Positions 25,840-34,900 of a DNA stretch of 64,000 nucleotides are shown one piece after another (positions within the stretch are counted from its first letter, which is position 1; each line of letters opens with the position of its first letter). Source of the stretch: Orbicella franksi. Its lineage: Eukaryota. The stretch spans positions 15,066,001 through 15,130,000 of the forward strand of contig OZ116699.1 of NCBI GenBank assembly GCA_964199315.1, written 5' to 3'. The position numbers and the translations under genes were made by a program. Below the pieces are notes generated by a model, which made no database searches, was not told the origin of the DNA, and worked only from the letters and a program-made list of their open reading frames with translations.

Positions 25840-26821
25840 CACAGTCTGTCACTGGATGGAATTAATAGGAGGCGAACGAAAACAATTTGGTAGGTATTCA
25901 AACGCAATCGTGCGAGGCAAAAAAATTCAAAAATTGCACGTGAATGTTTCTTCAGGCATTTTAAAAAGAATTTACTCCGCATGAGGCCTCCAGTCGCTGA
26001 GCTCATCGAACACAGATGGGATAAAAAAAGGTCCGCTTTAGCCTAAAACCGTAGAAAAAGTGTATGTTTTGTTGGGTCGAGTGCAATTTTCCCTCAGACC
26101 GTTTCGGGTGACTTCGTCTCGTTTCAGTTTGTTTATAAGTCGCGACAAAAGAGAGGTGAAACTCAAAGCTATTAAATGAAGAGTACAGTCAAGCACGGAT
26201 AGATATTCGAACCCTGCGGGTAGGCTAATCACTCTCAATATTATTTGTCGTGAGGGATGAGTCCCTAAGGACCAATTATGGAGTCAAACAAAGAGTAAGA
26301 CGTGGGACGCAGAGAATGGACAATTAGACAAGACTAACCACAACTACTGTATTAAAATTATTGTTTTAACACGGCGAAAAAAGACTTTCCCTTCAATAAC
26401 CGTAATTTTTTCGTCGTCATTATTTTGGCTTCCTCAGTGATCACCGCGTCGCTGTAGGATCGATTTCATGTTTATCACATTAAGCAAATTCAAGTCTTGT
26501 GATTAGACAGTATGAGCAGCTCTTGAGATTCAACGGAGATAAACGAAGCGAAAAAAAGAAGTCAACTTCTCGACAAACCGCCGAGGGACCAACCCGAAAT
26601 CTTCAAACGGAGGTGGACGCAAATGGTGACTCATGATTGCAAGGTGCAGAAACCACATGTGACATGCATACCGACTCCTGTGGGTTTTAGTTTTGTGATT
26701 TTCCCACGAATAACGAAAGCAAGATACAGGTAGCAAAAACAATTCACTTCATGATATTTTACGCGAACTTCCGCACGAAATGCTTTCGCACCTTACGTCG
26801 AGATCGTAGCAGACTGATTAA

Positions 26822-27093
26822 TAGTCTGCTGGCAGCTGGTTTTTTCTCTAAGGGTCACTTAGACAGTGTTTAGTCATCGCGAACGCAAAAGGGCGGAAGA
26901 AAGCGGAAGAACGCAAATATGGGGGGACTGAAGCCGATGGGAGTAGCGATAAGGACACTGCAGAGAAACAGGACGACAAGGAAGAACAGGCTGGAGGAAG
27001 CGCAGTGGATCCGGAAACAGATGCGCAGGTTCAATTCAATGTTGGATAACCCCAGCTGAAATTTCGGGACAAAAACAGACTGCCAGCAGTCTA
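26822..27093 (+). mobile_element. Pack-type non-autonomous TIR element (TAG...CTA termini, 9-bp TSD; AcademH- or MULE-like) carrying a PSMD4 exon fragment
   Basis: TIR TAGTCTGCTGGCAGCTGGTTTTT versus AAAAACAGACTGCCAGCAGTCTA. TSD ACTGATTAA at 26813-26821 and 27094-27102. Internal 26928-27040 aligns to the reverse complement of 32769-32875. Confidence 0.85.
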
Positions 27094-30000
27094 ACTGATT
27101 AAAGGCATTTTATCAGGGTTCTAAATGCGTGTTTTTCTAAAGAAAATCTGGATTTAATACAAAACAACACCAGCAACAAAGATATCAACTTCCACACGTA
27201 ATAACTCATTTTAAGTGCATCAGTGATACCCTGTTTCCGTTATAGCTCGTTATCCATCCATCCATCCTTAATCTGGCAATCATTCTTTTCACTGTGGGGG
27301 GTCTATGCAACCCCTCTTGAAGTGTTTTTATCGTATGGTACTTGAATCATAATTGAATTGCCCAAAACCTTTACATATTTCTACTAACAAAACCGAGGAT
27401 AACCTTTGTAAGAATGACACCTAGAAAAGAGCTCAGTCAAGGTTCATTCAAAGAGGTTAACCGAGACATATGCATCAAGAGACTTGTCGGAGCTTGCGCT
27501 AAGGAACGTAATTGGTAATGATTTAAATATAGTGATTGCAGCTTACCATAGCATTTTTTTCCTCCGAGGTAGCGGTAGTTTAGTTAGGCCCACTGGTCGC
27601 TCAGATCCGGTTATCAGCTAAATTTGAAAAGCATTCAAGACTTCAAAGCCAATGATTGAACGAACTATGATTGAACTACTTGATTGATGTTATTACTACC
27701 GGAGCAAACAATAAAGTATATAGCGTCCAATGTTGAAAATATATTTGTTTTGCTCTCCGATTAAGGGTTAAATTTAAAAATCAGCTAGCACAAAAATTTT
27801 GCCAAGTGAAATAAAGACCGATTAAGATGGAATGAACGGAGCTGAGGAATTGAAAAGAAGACTAAAAAAATACTAAACTCTACCATTCCCTTGTGATAGA
27901 GTTACATGTAAAGGCTTGAATCGGCGACTGGATAAATGCACGACAAGACACTTCGATTCCACCAATTGTTGACAAGCTTGGCAAATACTGGGTGAAAACT
28001 GGCAAGAACCCGCCCTGCCCCAGAGAAAAACATAAGGTCACAAACTCCTGCAATCCAGTCTTCGAGGTGCATTTCCCAAGTATATCATCAGCGGCCCGAC
28101 TCATATGCCAGACTCGATTTCCGCCGCTCTCTCGAGTCCGGCTACGTTCCTCCTCGAAAATAGACTTCGGGGGTGGAGCCCAGGTTCCTTTCCCGAACAG
28201 CGGCTGGTAATCAATGCGTGACTATGTAAAACCAGCAAGCCACCCTACTGTAGTGTTTTGTGCCTTAAGGGCTACAAGGACCTCGTGGAGTACCACGTGG
28301 TTAGGGTATTGTCTATGTGGAAAAACAATTAGTGTTAAGGACGGGTGGTAAAACGGTGAGACGGCAATGTTTTCGTGTGCAAAACAACTACAAAACCTGC
28401 AAAACTGGTTCGATCACAATCACGATCTCAAGTCGGCGCACGAATTGAGAGTGTTCTGCCATAAAGTGGTATGTGATCAGCACCTTTTCTACGAACCACA
28501 AGAAATTGTTTTCATTCAACAAACTACTGAAAACTTAAAAATAAAATTGACTTTCATCCCGTCAGCGTGGAATAACGAGTTAAGTTACAAGCATCGGAAC
28601 TTTCCGATTAGAGGGAATTTTTGCCCTGCATTGGCGCGGCTCTGGAAATCGCTCTGGATAAAACAAAACTTAAACAAATCGAGATTTTTTGTACACTCTT
28701 GAAACATTTTGAGTCTTCTGATTCAGTTGAATTTCAAAGAAATAAAATTGTAAGGTTAACCTTGGGAGGCGTGTTGGAGGCTGGGATCATGGCACTCTCC
28801 TTTGCGCGACGAACGCGAAACACGCTAGAAACACGCGCGATTACCTTTTGCCTCTATCAGCTGGCGACCCGCTGAACGCGAGATAAGTAAGTTAGATTGA
28901 TCACGTGCTTTGCCGCAAAACGGAAGTTATTGTTAAGGTACAAAGGACTGATTATTACTTCCATGTATTCGGCTGTTTTAATTTTATAGTTCTTTTGTAC
29001 AACATGACCCATATAATTATCAGTGGTACTGATATAGACGTGTTTGACGTTATTGGATACCATATGCGGTCAGAAAAATAATTTTGAGGCGCTTTTGCAT
29101 TTTCGCACTGTTGACGCCCAAAATGTTTTGTCTAGGACGAGAATTAATCCGTAGGATTACCTCTGTTGGCAGATCGCGAATTTTAATAATCCACAACTAC
29201 ACCCAACCTAAACAGGCATAGAATCAGCGGTATTGTAACCCATGTAATGTGTAGCACAGTTTTGTCAGGAGCTTAGCGCTTTCTTGAACAGTATCGTAAA
29301 TACCATCTGCTGGGAAGCAAAATTGACTTGGCTTGACGTTCCATTTTCCTGTCAAAAAGGCGAATAATTGTTTAGAAAGACTTCCTAATATTTATTATGG
29401 CCCATTTGCAACTGAGAGCAAAAAGCTAATCAAACATAGCTTTAGTTGTAAACACAGATACCTATATAGTTGATAACGAATACTTCACGCACCTCATGTA
29501 GTTTGATCTGCCAGTTTTCTCTTGTACATCCATCAAGCCTGGTAAAAATTTTGGCATTTGTCCACAATGTTTGGTACTTTCTATGAAACATCCTATTTCG
29601 TGCAGAAACATCTGTTTGTTGTTCAGTTGTCTTTTGTTGCTCTTGTCTTGCATTTTTACAGAGGCGCCAACATGGTCTCGGAAACAAGTGTTTGATTGAT
29701 CGGTATTCCCGGCTCAAGTAGTAGCTATCAAGTCTATACCAGTATCTTCACAGAATATCTGCTGCTAGTGCCATTACCGAAAATGGGCAGGTGGAGAGGG
29801 TAAGAAATTCGACAAGATAATCATGATAATAAGAAAAATTATTTATACAAGATAGCCTGTATCAATAATAACAACGTGAGCCGTGTTATTAATATAAGAG
29901 TTGCAGTAAGGTAATGAAATCAAGGGAGACACTGTATATCCACGTTTGTTTTTACACATCTGTTTCAATAATACAGAACCTTGCATTTCATATATATCAA

Positions 30001-30228
30001 ATGCAACCGCTATAACTCCTCTAAGGTTATTGTTACGTTAACGATTGCCACTATGTTAGAGCGATTAGCACTTCATGTTGGTTGACATTTCACTAAAAGT
30101 TTTCCTTCAATGCCGGAACGTTTGGCAAAGTTTTGTTTTCGATGAAACATTTTGCCCAACACTTTGTTCGACCCAATAATGTTGGAACGTAAAGACGGCT
30201 TGGCATAGCAACAGCGAATCACAATTAA

Positions 30229-30879
30229 GGTAATTCCCCTGAAATAAAACTGCACATAGATTTTTGTTCAAACTTTGTCCAATGAATATTTATCATATGA
30301 GAACTTTAAAAATAAAATAAAAAAAGGGGGGGGTACCCATGCTCGTTAAGGAGCAGCGAGGCATTGAAAATGTCCCATTTTAGCGTTATTTAATGCTTAT
30401 TACAAAAACGCATTCCAAGTTACTGTAAACTCTTTGTGAGTCCAGACTCATAAAAACACGCCTCAAACTACAGCCAATACTTGTGTCGGACACAAATAAA
30501 CTTTTTAAGTTTGATTTTGACAGACAGCTGAATCCTTGTTAAAATATTGGAACCAAATTGCTTGCCACGGCTATCAAACTGCAAAATACAAAAAAAAAAA
30601 TATACAGTGCAGCTGCTGTTTTCCTTATTTATTCAATTTTCAACAATAGAAATCAGATCGGTCTTTTCTCACGCAAAGCTAATGTTAGTTGATTAAAATG
30701 ACTGGAAAAAAATTTGGGGTGCCCGAGCTCGTTAGTGAGCTTTAGCCATTTTTCAACTGACAGAACTCAATATCAAGGTAAATCCGCCATGTTTTCAATG
30801 TGCGCGTGCACGAAGCGCGCTAATGACGCCATAAAATTATGCGCAGTAAGGATGCGCAATGCAAAATTGGGGAATGACC
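30229..30879. mobile_element. Kolobok-type non-autonomous element, 651 bp, TTAA TSD
   Basis: TTAA|GGTAATTCCCC ... GGGGAATGACC|TTAA. Purine termini with a TTAA TSD fit Kolobok rather than piggyBac. Confidence 0.65.
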
Positions 30880-31931
30880 TTAAGTACCCAGTCCCCAATC
30901 TGATAGAATTTGAGCTTTTAAAAAATTGAAGACTCGCAGAAACAAATAAACAAACGCAACATTTATAATTGCCGACGTGATGTTGGATGACGTGCTGCGC
31001 ATGCGCCTCCAACAAATGTTGGCCAACAACGTTAGAACGTTCAGACGGCGCTTTAGTGTTTTGAAAATGTTCTACAAAAATTAGTAGCCCCCTGAAAAGT
31101 GCGTTAAAACTGGAAAGTATGTTAAAGCTGTTAAAACAGCCCAAGATTTTTTTAAGAGGGAACTGATCGAGTCGGGTGAAATCAATGCGTATTCAATTTG
31201 TTTTTTGAGAGGGTTTCAGGGGTATGGAGAAACTGGAGTTTGGTTTTAAAGACTTTCAGACACTTTTTCGTGAAATATTCCACCTCGAAATCCTTTTGGG
31301 ATGCAAATTACCTTCGTATTCCCGGGTACAACAGGTTTGAAGCGTCTTGTTAACAGTTCAGGACGCATGGAGATATACTTTGGGAGAGTTCCACTTGTCT
31401 CGGGGCGAGATAAAAGGGGAGGTGTATTGAACAGGAAATGCAAGCTGATCTGCAGATCGGACCGGGCTCGGGCTCGAAGGGTCTTACCGCGACTGGAAGG
31501 CCTGAGAAGGAAGAGAGCAAAATGGCCGATCGAGGGGAGAATGGGGTGTGGGTTGCTCTCCACTAAATCTTCGACTAGAGAGCCTGTTCACAGGCTAGGC
31601 ATCGGTGGGATACAAAACTGTCTTCTTTTTCATAATCGTTCTCGTTTACGATATGTTTTGTTTTTTTCATCACAATCTGAGATTAAGTAATTTTGGATTA
31701 AGTAATCTCCTTAATATCACTGAGAGGAGTGGAGAATGGTCGAGGAGGTGAGGGGATATGAGAGACTGAGTGTAACAAACAGTTATCAAACAATACATTC
31801 ATTTCAAACAATTTATTTAGCGCAGAAGGCGAAAAATCCTCTGCATTACCTGACTTGAGGAAAATTACTCCATTCTATAATTTTTTGCAATGTTTACTCG
31901 AAAAGCAAAAGTATGTACAAAGAATGTTTCG

Positions 31932-34900
31932 TTATTTCTTGTCTTTTTTCTTGTCTTTGCTGGACTCCTCGTCCATGGGCTCATCTTGGTCCTTGCTTTC
32001 GTCACTGTCCTGCTGAGCGAGGGACACCATGACCTTTTGAATGGCCTCGCTGCTGGGGTCTACGCCAGGTAACGTGCTAAGGACGTTCTTGATAAAGTCC
32101 GGATCGGACATGACCCCAGTGATGTCTTGAGTGTCATCTCCCTGTTTGCAACAACAATGCAGATAAAGATTGTGCTCTTTTCTATTAACTCTACGTTAAG
32201 ATATCGCTGATTACTGTGATTGGTTCATAAAATGCGTGCAATGCGCTCTAACCAATCAAAGCTCCGGCCCAATCAATCGTCGTTTCTACCAATCAGGTGA
32301 TTTGCCTACCAGCACTTTTCCCGCGCATGAGAAGATGGATCGCTTACAAGTTGACGTAGTTCAGAATGTTTTTATTCTGCATTTTCCGCTTCCATGATTG
32401 TTTTCGTAAATGCTTTAATTTACAAACCGCTGTAAAATTTGCAGCAATTTCGGTCACATTGACCGAATCAAGTCAATTATTATCTACGTCAGTTTATTTC
32501 TGATAAAGGTAAGAAGCTGCGCCAGGAAGCGGGTAGTTCAACCAAACATTTGTCCAAGCTATAAATTTGATCCGAAGCTACATGTACGAACACTATTACA
32601 CCCAACATTTTAAATTGATTTATTCTCGTAAAAGACTTTTTGTTGATAGAGGAAAATTTTGAGATCTACACAGAAATAATACGTAACATTTTAAAGCACT
32701 TTTCAGCAGTCAAAAAACTGTCACACAACAGGAATAAAAGCAAGTAATTCACAATTTTCCGACGCAGAATTGAATCGAACCTGTGTATCTGTTTCCATTG
32801 CGCTCGCTCCAGCCTGTTCTTCCTTCTCGTCCTGTTTCTCTGCGGTTTCCTTCTCGCTGCTCCCATCGGCTTCAGCGTCCGCCTCTAGATTCTGCAGTGA
32901 CAGCCTCATGGCATACTCAATCTGCTGTTCCTCTGTCATAGCACTGAAGTCAAACACTGGCGTCTGGGGAGTAGACATGGACAGCGCCTGCTGCAGCATC
33001 GCCTCCTCGCTGTCAGCGATAGGAGCTTCAGGGGTGGGAGCCTCCTCCCCGCTGGCTGCTGTGACCCTGCGCGCTTCTTCCTCCTGCCGTTGCCGCTGCT
33101 CCTCCATGGACACACGGAGGGCCTGGAACAGAAACACATGTGCAAACACCCATTAAACCCTGCCGTAACCTTACCCAGGTCGACGTCAAAATTCTCCAAG
33201 CTAATATCATAGATTTTCATTAAGACGACTGTCTTGAAATAATCAGATAGGTCATTTGCAAATCTGCTTATCTGAATCACCTGAACATCCAAATTACGAG
33301 TTCTCCAAAACAACTGTGTTAGTTTTCATTACAAACTGTACAATGTCACACATGCAAGAAATCAAACCATCATCCTAACATAAAAACAGCGATTTTCTGC
33401 TTTTATCCACACCATTTCTACTTTTTTTAAGTCATACATCTGTTTAGAGCATGTTTCAGGTAACCATGCCCTAAAGCTTCCAACTGCTACCTCTTGCCAG
33501 CCAGTGGTGACCCCTGTTTATCCATATGACAGATAGTATGAACACTCACCAGGGCAAGCTCAGGATCAGAATTAGGATCAAACCCGTATTCTGAGGCATA
33601 TTCCATTCCAGGAGCGGCACCATCCTCCCCTTGCAGTATGGGTGATGATATAAGTGCATCGGACAGCAGTGGACCTGGCGGCACTGTCACCAGATGGCAC
33701 AAGTTCCCGTCCTTACCATTAAGGGTGTTGATGAATATTGTTAACTTCTCTGAATTTGCAGTCTGAAGAATTGGAAAAAATTTCACACTTTTCAGTCTCA
33801 AGTTTTCAACCTCGGAGGTAATGTAAAGACCTTGGGTGTTTTCCAATCAATCAAAAATTAGGCCACATCCCTTGCGAGGTTGTCTTCTTTTCCGGAAATT
33901 CCGGAAAATGATGTTCCATTCGTCGATGGAAATTCCTGGAACTGCAAACTGGAATTTTTGGTTGAATGGAACGTGCCCCTTAAAAGTGGTTAAAATGTAG
34001 GATTTGCAAAGTCTGAAAAATATAGACAAGCACAATATTCCCATTCATTAGAGCTATTTGGTATTGAACATTTTCACAAGAGCAAACAAGTGCAGTGCGG
34101 TAGAAATGCTTATGACAGGGTTTCAGTCCTTCAACACAAAAGAAAAAAGAAAACAAAATTTACAAGCACACAGAGTTGGCCCCTCGGTGCACAGACTATC
34201 CCCTCTCAGAACACACTGTAACAGGTCATGCACTTTCTCAGAAGAGTAGTTTCTGGTATGACAGACTAGACTGCAAGCAGTCTCTCTTTCGCTTGATGAT
34301 CCACTTGGGTAGAATGCAAGCAAATAAGAAGAGGCATGAAACCGCAAGACGTGAGACACAGACACAGATCTTTGAGCAAAAGGGAGACTGCTTGCAGCCT
34401 AGTGACATCACTATAATTACCTCTTCACCAAAATTAACAATGTCAATGTTCACTTTTTCCTTTTTAAGCTTCTTGGCAAGTTTGACAAGCTAAATACAAA
34501 AAGTACATAGCAATAAGGTCACCAAGATAAAGCAAATTACTAATTCATTACATAATCAACCTGTTGTATAGCTACATGTAGAAAAGAGTACTGAACTCTC
34601 TATACACCCTGCTGCCATAGGAAAAGGGTAAATCTTGCACTCACAAAAGTGGCTTAGGGTTTCACCACTTCCCAAGATGGGCAGCCTCCAATGCAGGTGT
34701 TCTTTTGGCTCATCATTCACTCCTCCCCATCATGGAGGAGGAAAGATTGCATGGCAAGCCAAAATGATATCCTTGTGGATGCTGTTACAGGTGGCTTAAA
34801 CCAAAGTCTAACACAATGCTAACTGGCCACTGTCACCCACAAAAATGATTCCTTGCCATCATACTACCCATCAATGGTTTATGTTCCAAGAAGAATGGCA

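What the first reader, a model, noticed from the sequence alone, without database searches (positions are those of the whole stretch)
26822..27093. Pack-type TIR transposon that captured part of the neighbouring PSMD4 exon 7 and its splice donor
Seen: a 272-bp element with ~23-bp imperfect TIRs (TAG...CTA) and a perfect 9-bp TSD (ACTGATTAA). Its interior (26928-27040) matches PSMD4 32769-32875 in inverted orientation, 5.7 kb away, with 11 mismatches in 107 bp plus an in-frame 6-nt indel by manual alignment. The match crosses the exon/intron junction (CAG|GTTCRATTCAAT), so capture happened at the DNA level rather than by retroposition. Known: Pack-MULEs are common in plants, Pack-TIR gene capture is much less documented in animals, and 9-bp TSDs with TAG termini fit AcademH or Mutator-type elements. 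Inference: this is a cnidarian exon-shuffling vehicle that copied a local template.
Basis: partly seen in the sequence, partly recalled or inferred. Interest (0 to 1): 0.82.

Follow-up and report, generated by a model that had tools for sequence, protein, structure and literature searches.

The report
Old coral MITE carrying PSMD4 fragment
A small non-autonomous DNA transposon in a coral genome had its middle replaced long ago by about 120 bases copied from the proteasome gene PSMD4 5.7 kb away; this is a real example of a known process and shows no sign of having gained a function.

Summary
Window 26822-27093 is a 272-bp copy of a MITE family with at least 150 exact termini in this genome, TAG...CTA ends and a perfect 9-bp TSD. 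Its core is replaced by about 120 bp copied in inverted orientation from the last 95 nt of the penultimate PSMD4 coding exon plus the start of the following intron. The capture therefore happened at the DNA level. The fragment occurs only twice in the 497-Mb genome: here and in PSMD4.

New here:
- The same element, with the same TSD, junctions and a shared 6-nt insertion, sits at the orthologous site of a coral about 15-20% diverged. Another coral of similar divergence has an empty site. The capture is therefore old and happened once.
- The two orthologous captured fragments are 78-79% identical, no better than their flanks (82-87%). They carry frame-breaking indels, and the former splice donor is GT>GC in the other species. 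This is neutral decay.
- Independent assemblies confirm the structure.
- Some RNA-run contigs hold the interior, but a poly(A) raw-read run shows no reads.

This matches the single-copy, cis-biased, gap-filling Pack-TIRs of Tan et al. 2021, so it is a new member of a known kind. The superfamily is undetermined and no autonomous partner was found. The "exon-shuffling vehicle" reading is not supported.

The parts
26813..26821 (.). Left target-site duplication ACTGATTAA
   Evidence: The orthologue L046 has the same 9-mer.
26822..26899 (+). MITE left arm, with the TIR at about 26822-26844
   Evidence: 91-96% identical to positions 1-75 of at least 40 other copies. 94.7% identical to the orthologous copy in L046.
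26900..26924 (+). Degenerate remnant of the family's 42-bp-repeat core, with internal deletions relative to the L046 orthologue
   Evidence: Alignment with family copies and with L046.
26925..27045 (+). Captured PSMD4 fragment in sense orientation on the + strand. The exon-derived part runs to 27028 (..CAG). The intron-derived part is 27029-27045 (GTTCAATTCAATGTTGG).
   Evidence: E about 1e-28, only two places in the genome. (GTTG is ancestral intron sequence in L046's parental gene).
27046..27093 (+). MITE right arm, with the TIR at about 27071-27093
   Evidence: 85-92% identical to positions 225-272 of other copies.
27094..27102 (.). Right target-site duplication ACTGATTAA
32769..32875 (-). 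Parental segment in PSMD4: the last 95 nt of exon 7 (32781-32875) plus the first 12 nt of intron 7 (32769-32780)
32781..33122 (-). PSMD4 penultimate coding exon (UIM1-UIM2 region), the donor of the fragment
   Evidence: Translation. Pfam UIM on the orthologues. Acceptor and donor positions.
31932..32141 (-). PSMD4 last coding exon (GDDTQ...[17 protein letters not shown]...KKDKK*). It shows that 32780 downward is intron.

Best explanation
This is a single-copy Pack-MITE, a Pack-TIR element.

Step 1, insertion. A copy of a roughly 210-260-bp non-autonomous TIR transposon inserted into the PSMD4-adducin intergenic region. The family has TAG...CTA termini, an 8-9-bp TSD and an internal 42-bp minisatellite. 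The insertion happened in a common ancestor of this coral and the coral of locus L046, and made the 9-bp TSD.

Step 2, capture. On the same short branch, a double-strand break inside the element, or its abortive excision, was repaired by synthesis that switched template to the nearest part of PSMD4, 5.7 kb away, and back. This replaced about 65-70 bp of the MITE core with about 120 bp spanning the exon 7/intron 7 junction, in inverted orientation.

Step 3, decay. The packed element never transposed again. It has since decayed as neutral DNA.

Shown: family membership, the TSD, the boundaries, DNA-level origin, uniqueness, the direction of transfer (PSMD4 to the element), shared ancestry of the two orthologous copies, the empty site in an outgroup, and lack of constraint.

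Inferred: the repair mechanism (in-situ gap filling with template switching) and the order of insertion and capture.
For: Family membership and TSD.

Unique interior: only two genomic places match it.

Homology to PSMD4 is confined to the interior, between MITE arms.

Intron sequence is included, and the exon/intron junction was verified.

Direction of transfer:
- The exon end [10 protein letters not shown]|GT is conserved in about 40 coral orthologues, including species without the element.
- Only 1 of at least 150 MITE copies carries the piece.

One old event:
- L046 has the element at the orthologous site with the same TSD, the same junctions and a shared 6-nt insertion absent from all six parental genes.
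- L052 is collinear and lacks the element.
- The tree puts WIN and L046 together, weakly.
- The captured copy keeps states (KDT, DAQ, FNV) that the window's own PSMD4 has since changed but relatives retain.

Neutral decay:
- Orthologous captured pieces are 77.7-78.9% identical, against 82-87% for the flanks.
- There is a 14-nt deletion and a GT>GC change in L046, and a 5-nt deletion in the window copy.

Not an artefact:
- DNA contigs of three labelled organisms carry the element at this locus.
- Six independent metagenome or Logan contigs also carry it. One of them spans from the element to PSMD4 exon 7.

The pattern equals that of Tan et al. 2021 (PMC8277862): most animal Pack-TIRs are single-copy, 57% lie under 15 kb from the parent, their breakpoints are internal, and they are ascribed to gap filling.
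Against: - No orthologous 'MITE without cargo' was found. Insertion and capture fall on the same unresolved short branch, so in-situ capture is not shown directly.
- The junctions show at most 1-3 nt of microhomology, and they are blurred by about 20% divergence, so the template-switch signature is weak.
- The WIN+L046 clade has only 59/75 support. If L052 were closer to the window species, its empty site would need excision or lineage sorting.
- L047 lacks the element together with about 75 bp of flank, which is a deletion and not a clean empty site.
- The captured piece resembles several species' parental genes about equally (87-89%). The capture could therefore predate the radiation that includes L052.
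Confidence: 0.72

Rival explanations
1. Capture first, then a local hop. On this reading the MITE picked up the PSMD4 piece while sitting in or next to PSMD4, for example in intron 7. It was then cut and pasted 5.7 kb away by a transposase, and the 9-bp TSD at the present site dates from that jump. This is a transposition-dependent Pack element, as in Pack-MULEs.
For: - The outgroup L052 has no MITE at all at this site. There is therefore no evidence that a cargo-free MITE ever sat here.
- The TSD is perfect and encloses the packed element.
- DNA transposons often reinsert nearby (general knowledge).
Against: - No other copy of the packed element exists in the genome.
- No MITE remnant or footprint lies next to the parental segment.
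- Tan et al. found multicopy, transposed Pack-TIRs to lie far from their parents and single-copy ones to lie near them.
Confidence: 0.17
2. Exapted element. On this reading the captured open frame and splice donor, or an antisense or hairpin RNA against PSMD4, is used by the coral.
For: - Contigs of five RNA runs from three studies hold 0.80 of the sampled words of the unique interior.
- The PSMD4 frame is open through the fragment in both species.
- The left MITE arm is unusually conserved between species: 94.7% against about 84% for the flanks.
Against: - The fragment evolves no slower than its flanks.
- Indels of 14 and 5 nt break collinearity of the frame.
- The GT donor is GC in L046.
- The segment is inverted in L046, so any antisense relation to PSMD4 is not conserved.
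- A poly(A) raw-read run shows no reads on the element or its flanks apart from cross-mapping PSMD4 mRNA.
- A GA-rich acidic sequence stays free of stop codons by composition.
Confidence: 0.05
3. Not a capture. On this reading it is a chance similarity, an ordinary segmental duplication, or the PSMD4 exon end itself derives from the transposon.
For: None beyond the low-complexity, acidic nature of the sequence.
Against: - The match has E about 1e-28 genome-wide and is a unique pair.
- The homology ends inside the MITE arms.
- The exon end is conserved across scleractinians that lack the element.
- Only one of at least 150 MITE copies has the piece.
Confidence: 0.02

Closest known systems
Single-copy Pack-TIRs of animals (Tan et al. 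2021, Nat Commun 12:4280, PMC8277862)
   Same: - TIR-TE arms enclose a non-TE piece with one unambiguous parental copy.
- It is single-copy and on the same chromosome, within 15 kb of the parent.
- The breakpoints are internal to the TE.
- The origin is at the DNA level.
- There is little or no microhomology at the junctions.
   Different: - The host is a cnidarian. Their 100 UCSC genomes do not mention cnidarians.
- The element has a 9-bp TSD, so it is not hAT or Tc/Mariner, which made up 87% of their cases.
- It is much older: 85-88% identical to the parent, below their 90% cut-off. It is shared by two lineages about 15-20% diverged.
- No cargo-free orthologous TE has been seen so far.
Pack-MULEs of plants (rice, maize), and Pack-MULE-like elements reported in cnidarians (Nematostella Nv1 locus, PMC9842752; myxozoan Sphaerospora molnari preprint 10.64898/2026.02.11.705288)
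   Same: - A gene fragment that includes an exon/intron boundary lies between TIRs.
- The element is flanked by a 9-bp TSD.
- The element is small, about 300 bp.
   Different: - Pack-MULEs are often multicopy and mobilised, and some are expressed or under selection.
- This element is single-copy, immobile and decaying.
- Mutator membership is not established, because no MULE transposase with these termini was found.
Filler-DNA internal derivatives of cut-and-paste elements made by abortive gap repair (P element and Ac/Ds literature; general knowledge, also cited in PMC8277862)
   Same: The internal TE sequence is replaced by a short stretch copied from a nearby template.
   Different: Here the event is inferred from a product tens of millions of years old. 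No excision was observed.

Membership tests
Pack-TIR / Pack-MITE (operational definition of Tan et al. 2021) | Both ends are termini of one TIR-TE family | tested here: met
   Positions 1-78 and 225-272 match at least 40 other copies. There are 150 exact termini in the genome.
Pack-TIR / Pack-MITE (operational definition of Tan et al. 2021) | Internal non-TE sequence longer than 100 bp with one unambiguous parental locus that is not itself TE-associated | tested here: met
   About 120 bp. The only other genomic match is PSMD4 exon 7/intron 7. There is no MITE hit at the parental locus.
Pack-TIR / Pack-MITE (operational definition of Tan et al. 2021) | Identity to the parent of at least 90% (their 'young' cut-off) | tested here: not met
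   85% with gaps, 88% substitution-only. This is an age filter in their pipeline, not a structural criterion.
Pack-TIR / Pack-MITE (operational definition of Tan et al. 2021) | Not a retrocopy and not a segmental duplication | tested here: met
   The piece contains intron sequence. The homology ends inside the MITE arms in two species.
Mutator-like elements (would make it a Pack-MULE) | TSD of 8-10 bp, typically 9 bp | tested here: met
   11 of 13 copies have a 9-bp TSD and 2 of 13 have 8 bp.
Mutator-like elements (would make it a Pack-MULE) | Autonomous partner encoding a MULE transposase with the same termini | tested here: inconclusive
   13 MULE-domain loci (PF10551) were found. None has TAGWCTGCTGGCAG within 1.5 kb of the match. 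Two carry an unrelated CTGCAGGCTA motif inside a segmental duplicate. The longer relatives of 0.95-1.6 kb have no transposase.
AcademH | TSD of 9-10 bp (PMC10045372, citing Kojima 2020) | tested here: inconclusive
   9 bp fits, but the two 8-bp cases and the absence of any 10-bp case do not.
AcademH | Autonomous partner encoding an Academ transposase plus helicase | not tested
   No profile for the Academ transposase was at hand, and the original paper is not held.
hAT | 8-bp TSD and YARNG termini | tested here: not met
   The TSD is 9 bp in 11 of 13 copies. The termini are TAGTC and TAGAC, so the fifth base is C and not G.

The most novel reading that the evidence does not exclude
The packed element is transcribed, since RNA-run contigs hold its interior. 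Because the PSMD4 piece is inverted 5.7 kb downstream of its parent on the same transcription axis, read-through RNA would fold back on PSMD4 exon 7 sequence or act as antisense to it. That would give a lineage-specific small-RNA or dsRNA input on a proteasome ubiquitin-receptor gene. Separately, the strongly conserved left MITE arm may be a regulatory module upstream of adducin.
Probability: 0.05. Interest if true: 0.55.

Novelty: new member of a known kind. Interest (0 to 1): 0.3.

Why it matters
It gives a clean, phylogenetically dated example of transposon-mediated capture of a gene fragment in a reef-building coral. The evidence includes both orthologous filled sites and an empty site. 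It extends the single-copy, cis-biased Pack-TIR pattern described for vertebrates to cnidarians and to a family with a 9-bp TSD.

It also shows the usual fate of such captures, which is neutral decay rather than new exons. That is a useful caution against reading open frames and retained splice sites in captured fragments as evidence of exon shuffling.

It does not change what is known about the mechanism.

Tried and rejected
Search for an autonomous partner. None of these routes found a transposase with these termini.
- The 6.9-kb interval between two termini on C12 is two separate MITEs flanking a TRIM-NHL host gene.
- The 6.4-kb interval on C3 has one 305-aa ORF with no Pfam hit.
- The 0.95-1.36-kb relatives (L019, L032, L033) are longer non-autonomous members. 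Their interior is shared with a roughly 1.6-kb family of over 1000 candidate matches that has TAGCCTGCAG termini and 9-bp TSDs.
- The copies at the start of C6 and the end of C4 are truncated elements inside a subtelomere-like segmental duplicate.
- The MULE-domain loci lack the TIR.

Empty allele. No read-supported empty allele was found in three DNA runs. The 'skips about 200' joints are other, shorter MITE copies mapping onto the arms.

My early idea that 26900-26927 is templated filler with local repeats. I rejected it after the L046 orthologue showed that this stretch is degenerate MITE core.

Search for orthologous packed copies with the element's open frame. It found only the same species or its complex.

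The AcademH paper could not be read.

Full report
**1. The observation**

The stretch reads exactly as described.
- ACTGATTAA lies at 26813-26821 and again at 27094-27102, flanking a 272-bp element (26822-27093).
- The element's ends are imperfect inverted repeats, TAGTCTGCTGGCAGCTGGTTTTT and the reverse complement of AAAAACAGACTGCCAGCAGTCTA.
- A local alignment of the surroundings against the reverse complement of the PSMD4 region pairs 26928-27040 with 32769-32875. That is 113 vs 107 nt, with 10 mismatches and 6 gap columns.
- In a search of the whole 497-Mb assembly this pair scores E = 2e-28. The unique interior has only two matches in the genome: itself and PSMD4.

**2. It is a member of a real MITE family**

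- Positions 1-75 and 225-272 of the element match dozens of other loci at 85-96% identity.
- A 22-nt degenerate terminus pattern occurs 150 times, against 0 for the reversed control.
- Complete copies are 174-274 bp long.
- Their length varies mainly through a 42-bp internal minisatellite, which is expanded to about 12 units in L006.
- Of 13 copies with intact termini, 11 have a 9-bp TSD (5 perfect) and 2 have a perfect 8-bp TSD.
- The multiple alignment shows that the window copy shares the family's left part up to about 26899, plus a degenerate core remnant, and the right part from about 27046. About 65-70 bp of family core are missing and are replaced by the PSMD4 piece.

**3. The source is a real exon/intron junction**

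- The − strand of 33122-32781 encodes the UIM1-UIM2 region of PSMD4/Rpn10 (Pfam UIM on the orthologues).
- That exon ends ...ACA CAG|GT at 32781.
- The next exon begins in phase at 32141 behind an AG. It encodes GDDTQ...[17 protein letters not shown]...KKDKK and ends in a stop at 31932.
- About 40 exon-level ORFs from other corals end with ...GASAMETD(T/A/G)Q and diverge right after it.
- The copied piece therefore holds 95 nt of exon and at least 12 nt of intron. Comparison with L046's parental gene shows that the following GTTG(G) in the element is also ancestral intron sequence.

**4. Direction of transfer**

The exon end is conserved across scleractinians, including species that lack the element. 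Only one of at least 150 MITE copies carries the piece. PSMD4 is therefore the donor.

**5. Age and orthologues**

I used exon-level orthologues to fetch neighbouring DNA from other coral assemblies.
- **L046.** Its non-coding DNA is about 78-87% identical to the window. It carries the same element at the orthologous site, with:
  - TSD ACTGATTAA/ACCGATTAA;
  - the same MITE arms;
  - more of the family core retained on the left;
  - the same PSMD4 piece with the same right junction.
- **Shared insertion.** Both captured copies share a 6-nt insertion that is absent from all six parental genes compared.
- **L052.** It is collinear with the window across the site and has no element.
- **L047.** It lacks the element together with about 75 bp of flank, which is a deletion and not a clean empty site.
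- **Tree.** A maximum-likelihood tree of 1.7 kb of the PSMD4 region puts the window and L046 together, but weakly (59/75), inside a near-polytomy with L048 and L052. L047 and L049 fall outside.
- **Ancestral states.** The captured copy keeps KDT, DAQ and FNV, which relatives still have but the window's own PSMD4 has changed.

The insertion and the capture therefore predate the split of two lineages about 15-20% diverged at neutral sites, and the capture happened once.

**6. No sign of selection on the cargo**

- The two orthologous captured pieces are 77.7-78.9% identical and have 17-22 gap columns. The flanks are 82-87% identical.
- L046 has a 14-nt deletion and a 3-nt insertion in the piece. 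The window copy has a 5-nt deletion at the right junction.
- The former donor GT is GC in L046.
- The frame stays open in both species, but in a T-poor acidic sequence this is expected from composition.
- In L046 the roughly 0.9-kb segment carrying the element is inverted relative to the window and to L052. Even the orientation relative to PSMD4 is therefore not conserved.

**7. Reality of the assembly, and expression**

- Logan contigs of DNA runs from three labelled organisms cover the element and both flanks. They break only inside the repeated TIR. No empty allele was seen.
- Six independent metagenome or Logan contigs, 98-99% identical to the window, carry the element. One of them, 7.5 kb long, runs from the element to PSMD4 exon 7.
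- In the one raw RNA run I could lay (poly(A), about 10 M reads), the only reads on the element are PSMD4 mRNA reads cross-mapping to 26928-27009. Their loose ends are PSMD4 sequence.
- Contigs of five RNA runs from three studies hold 0.80 of the sampled words of the unique interior, and about 0.3 of the 1.3-kb surroundings.
- Low-level transcription in non-poly(A)-selected libraries is therefore likely. Its strand and structure are unknown. DNA carry-over is not excluded.

**8. Mechanism**

The structure is that of the single-copy Pack-TIRs of Tan et al. 2021 (PMC8277862). In that study:
- 370 Pack-TIRs were found in 100 animal genomes;
- 57% of the 281 unique cases lay within 15 kb of the parent;
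- the breakpoints were internal to the TE;
- there was microhomology of a few nt or none;
- the origin was ascribed to gap filling with template switching.

I adopt that explanation: repair of a break in, or abortive excision of, a resident MITE, with a switch to PSMD4 5.7 kb away. The junctions here allow at most 1-3 nt of microhomology and are blurred by age. No cargo-free orthologous MITE was found, so capture followed by a local hop remains a rival, which I put at about 0.17.

**9. Classification**

- A 9-bp TSD with TAG...CTA ends fits Mutator-like elements. It also fits AcademH, for which TSDs of 9-10 bp are reported (PMC10045372).
- It does not fit hAT.
- No autonomous partner was found, so the superfamily stays open.
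- Tan et al. found no Pack-MULE in animal reference genomes.
- Pack-MULE-like elements have since been reported in Nematostella (PMC9842752) and in a myxozoan (preprint 10.64898/2026.02.11.705288).

**10. Verdict**

The element is an old, single, immobile and decaying product of a known repair process. It is a new cnidarian member of a known kind, not an active exon-shuffling vehicle.

Noticed in passing
window 26822-26899 vs L046:19427-19505: The left arm of the MITE is 94.7% identical between the two orthologous copies. The flanks are 82-87% identical and the right arm 78.6%. The left arm is also the best-conserved part among copies within the genome (91-96% against 85-92%). Possible causes are gene conversion among copies, constraint, or chance.
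   Followed up: partly
L046:19070-19971 vs window 26467-27363: A segment of at least 0.9 kb carrying the element is inverted in the L046 coral relative to the window and to L052. The endpoints are not defined, and an assembly error in that contig is not excluded.
   Followed up: partly
window 31932-32141: The poly(A) RNA run X22 gave zero depth on the predicted last PSMD4 exon, although PSMD4 exon 7 reads were present because they cross-mapped to the element. This may be an effect of the tool's filter for conserved or human-like reads. It is unexplained.
   Followed up: no
L006 (G000:C8:29165832-29168907); family copies: The MITE family holds a 42-bp internal minisatellite (unit about GGGCGGTATGGCGGTGGCCGAGTAGGGAAGAAGGCGGGACAA). 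It is present once or twice in most copies and about 12 times in L006.
   Followed up: partly
L042:4151-5745, L043:4165-5754, L045:4129-5728: A non-autonomous family of about 1.6 kb, with over 1000 candidate matches, has termini TAGCCTGCAG(A/T)GCAGGCG and 9-bp TSDs. It shares about 650 bp of interior with the longer relatives (L019, L032, L033) of the MITE studied here. It probably belongs to the same superfamily.
   Followed up: partly
L040 (G000:C6:15200-25150) and L041 (G000:C4:34084900-34094800): Nearly identical blocks (97.8%) of at least 9.7 kb lie at the start of C6 and the end of C4, and recur on many small contigs. Each begins with a truncated relative of the MITE, followed by tandem arrays of about 1.98 kb and about 0.6 kb. 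They look like subtelomeric repeat blocks.
   Followed up: no
L031 (G000:C12:10311344-10319216): Two copies of the MITE in inverted orientation lie 6.4 kb apart and flank an intact 756-aa TRIM-NHL (RING, B-box, filamin, NHL) ORF. I did not check whether a common TSD would mark a composite element.
   Followed up: no
L055:594-1227 vs window 26461/26462: One metagenome contig of the same species complex has an extra 632 bp at window position 26461/26462. This is a polymorphic insertion or deletion about 360 bp from the element.
   Followed up: no
window 28000-28400 and 30200-31000: Summed contig depths of thousands in the DNA runs mark two high-copy repeats in the PSMD4-adducin intergenic region. 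Many joints around 28134-28191 point to a variable short internal segment.
   Followed up: no
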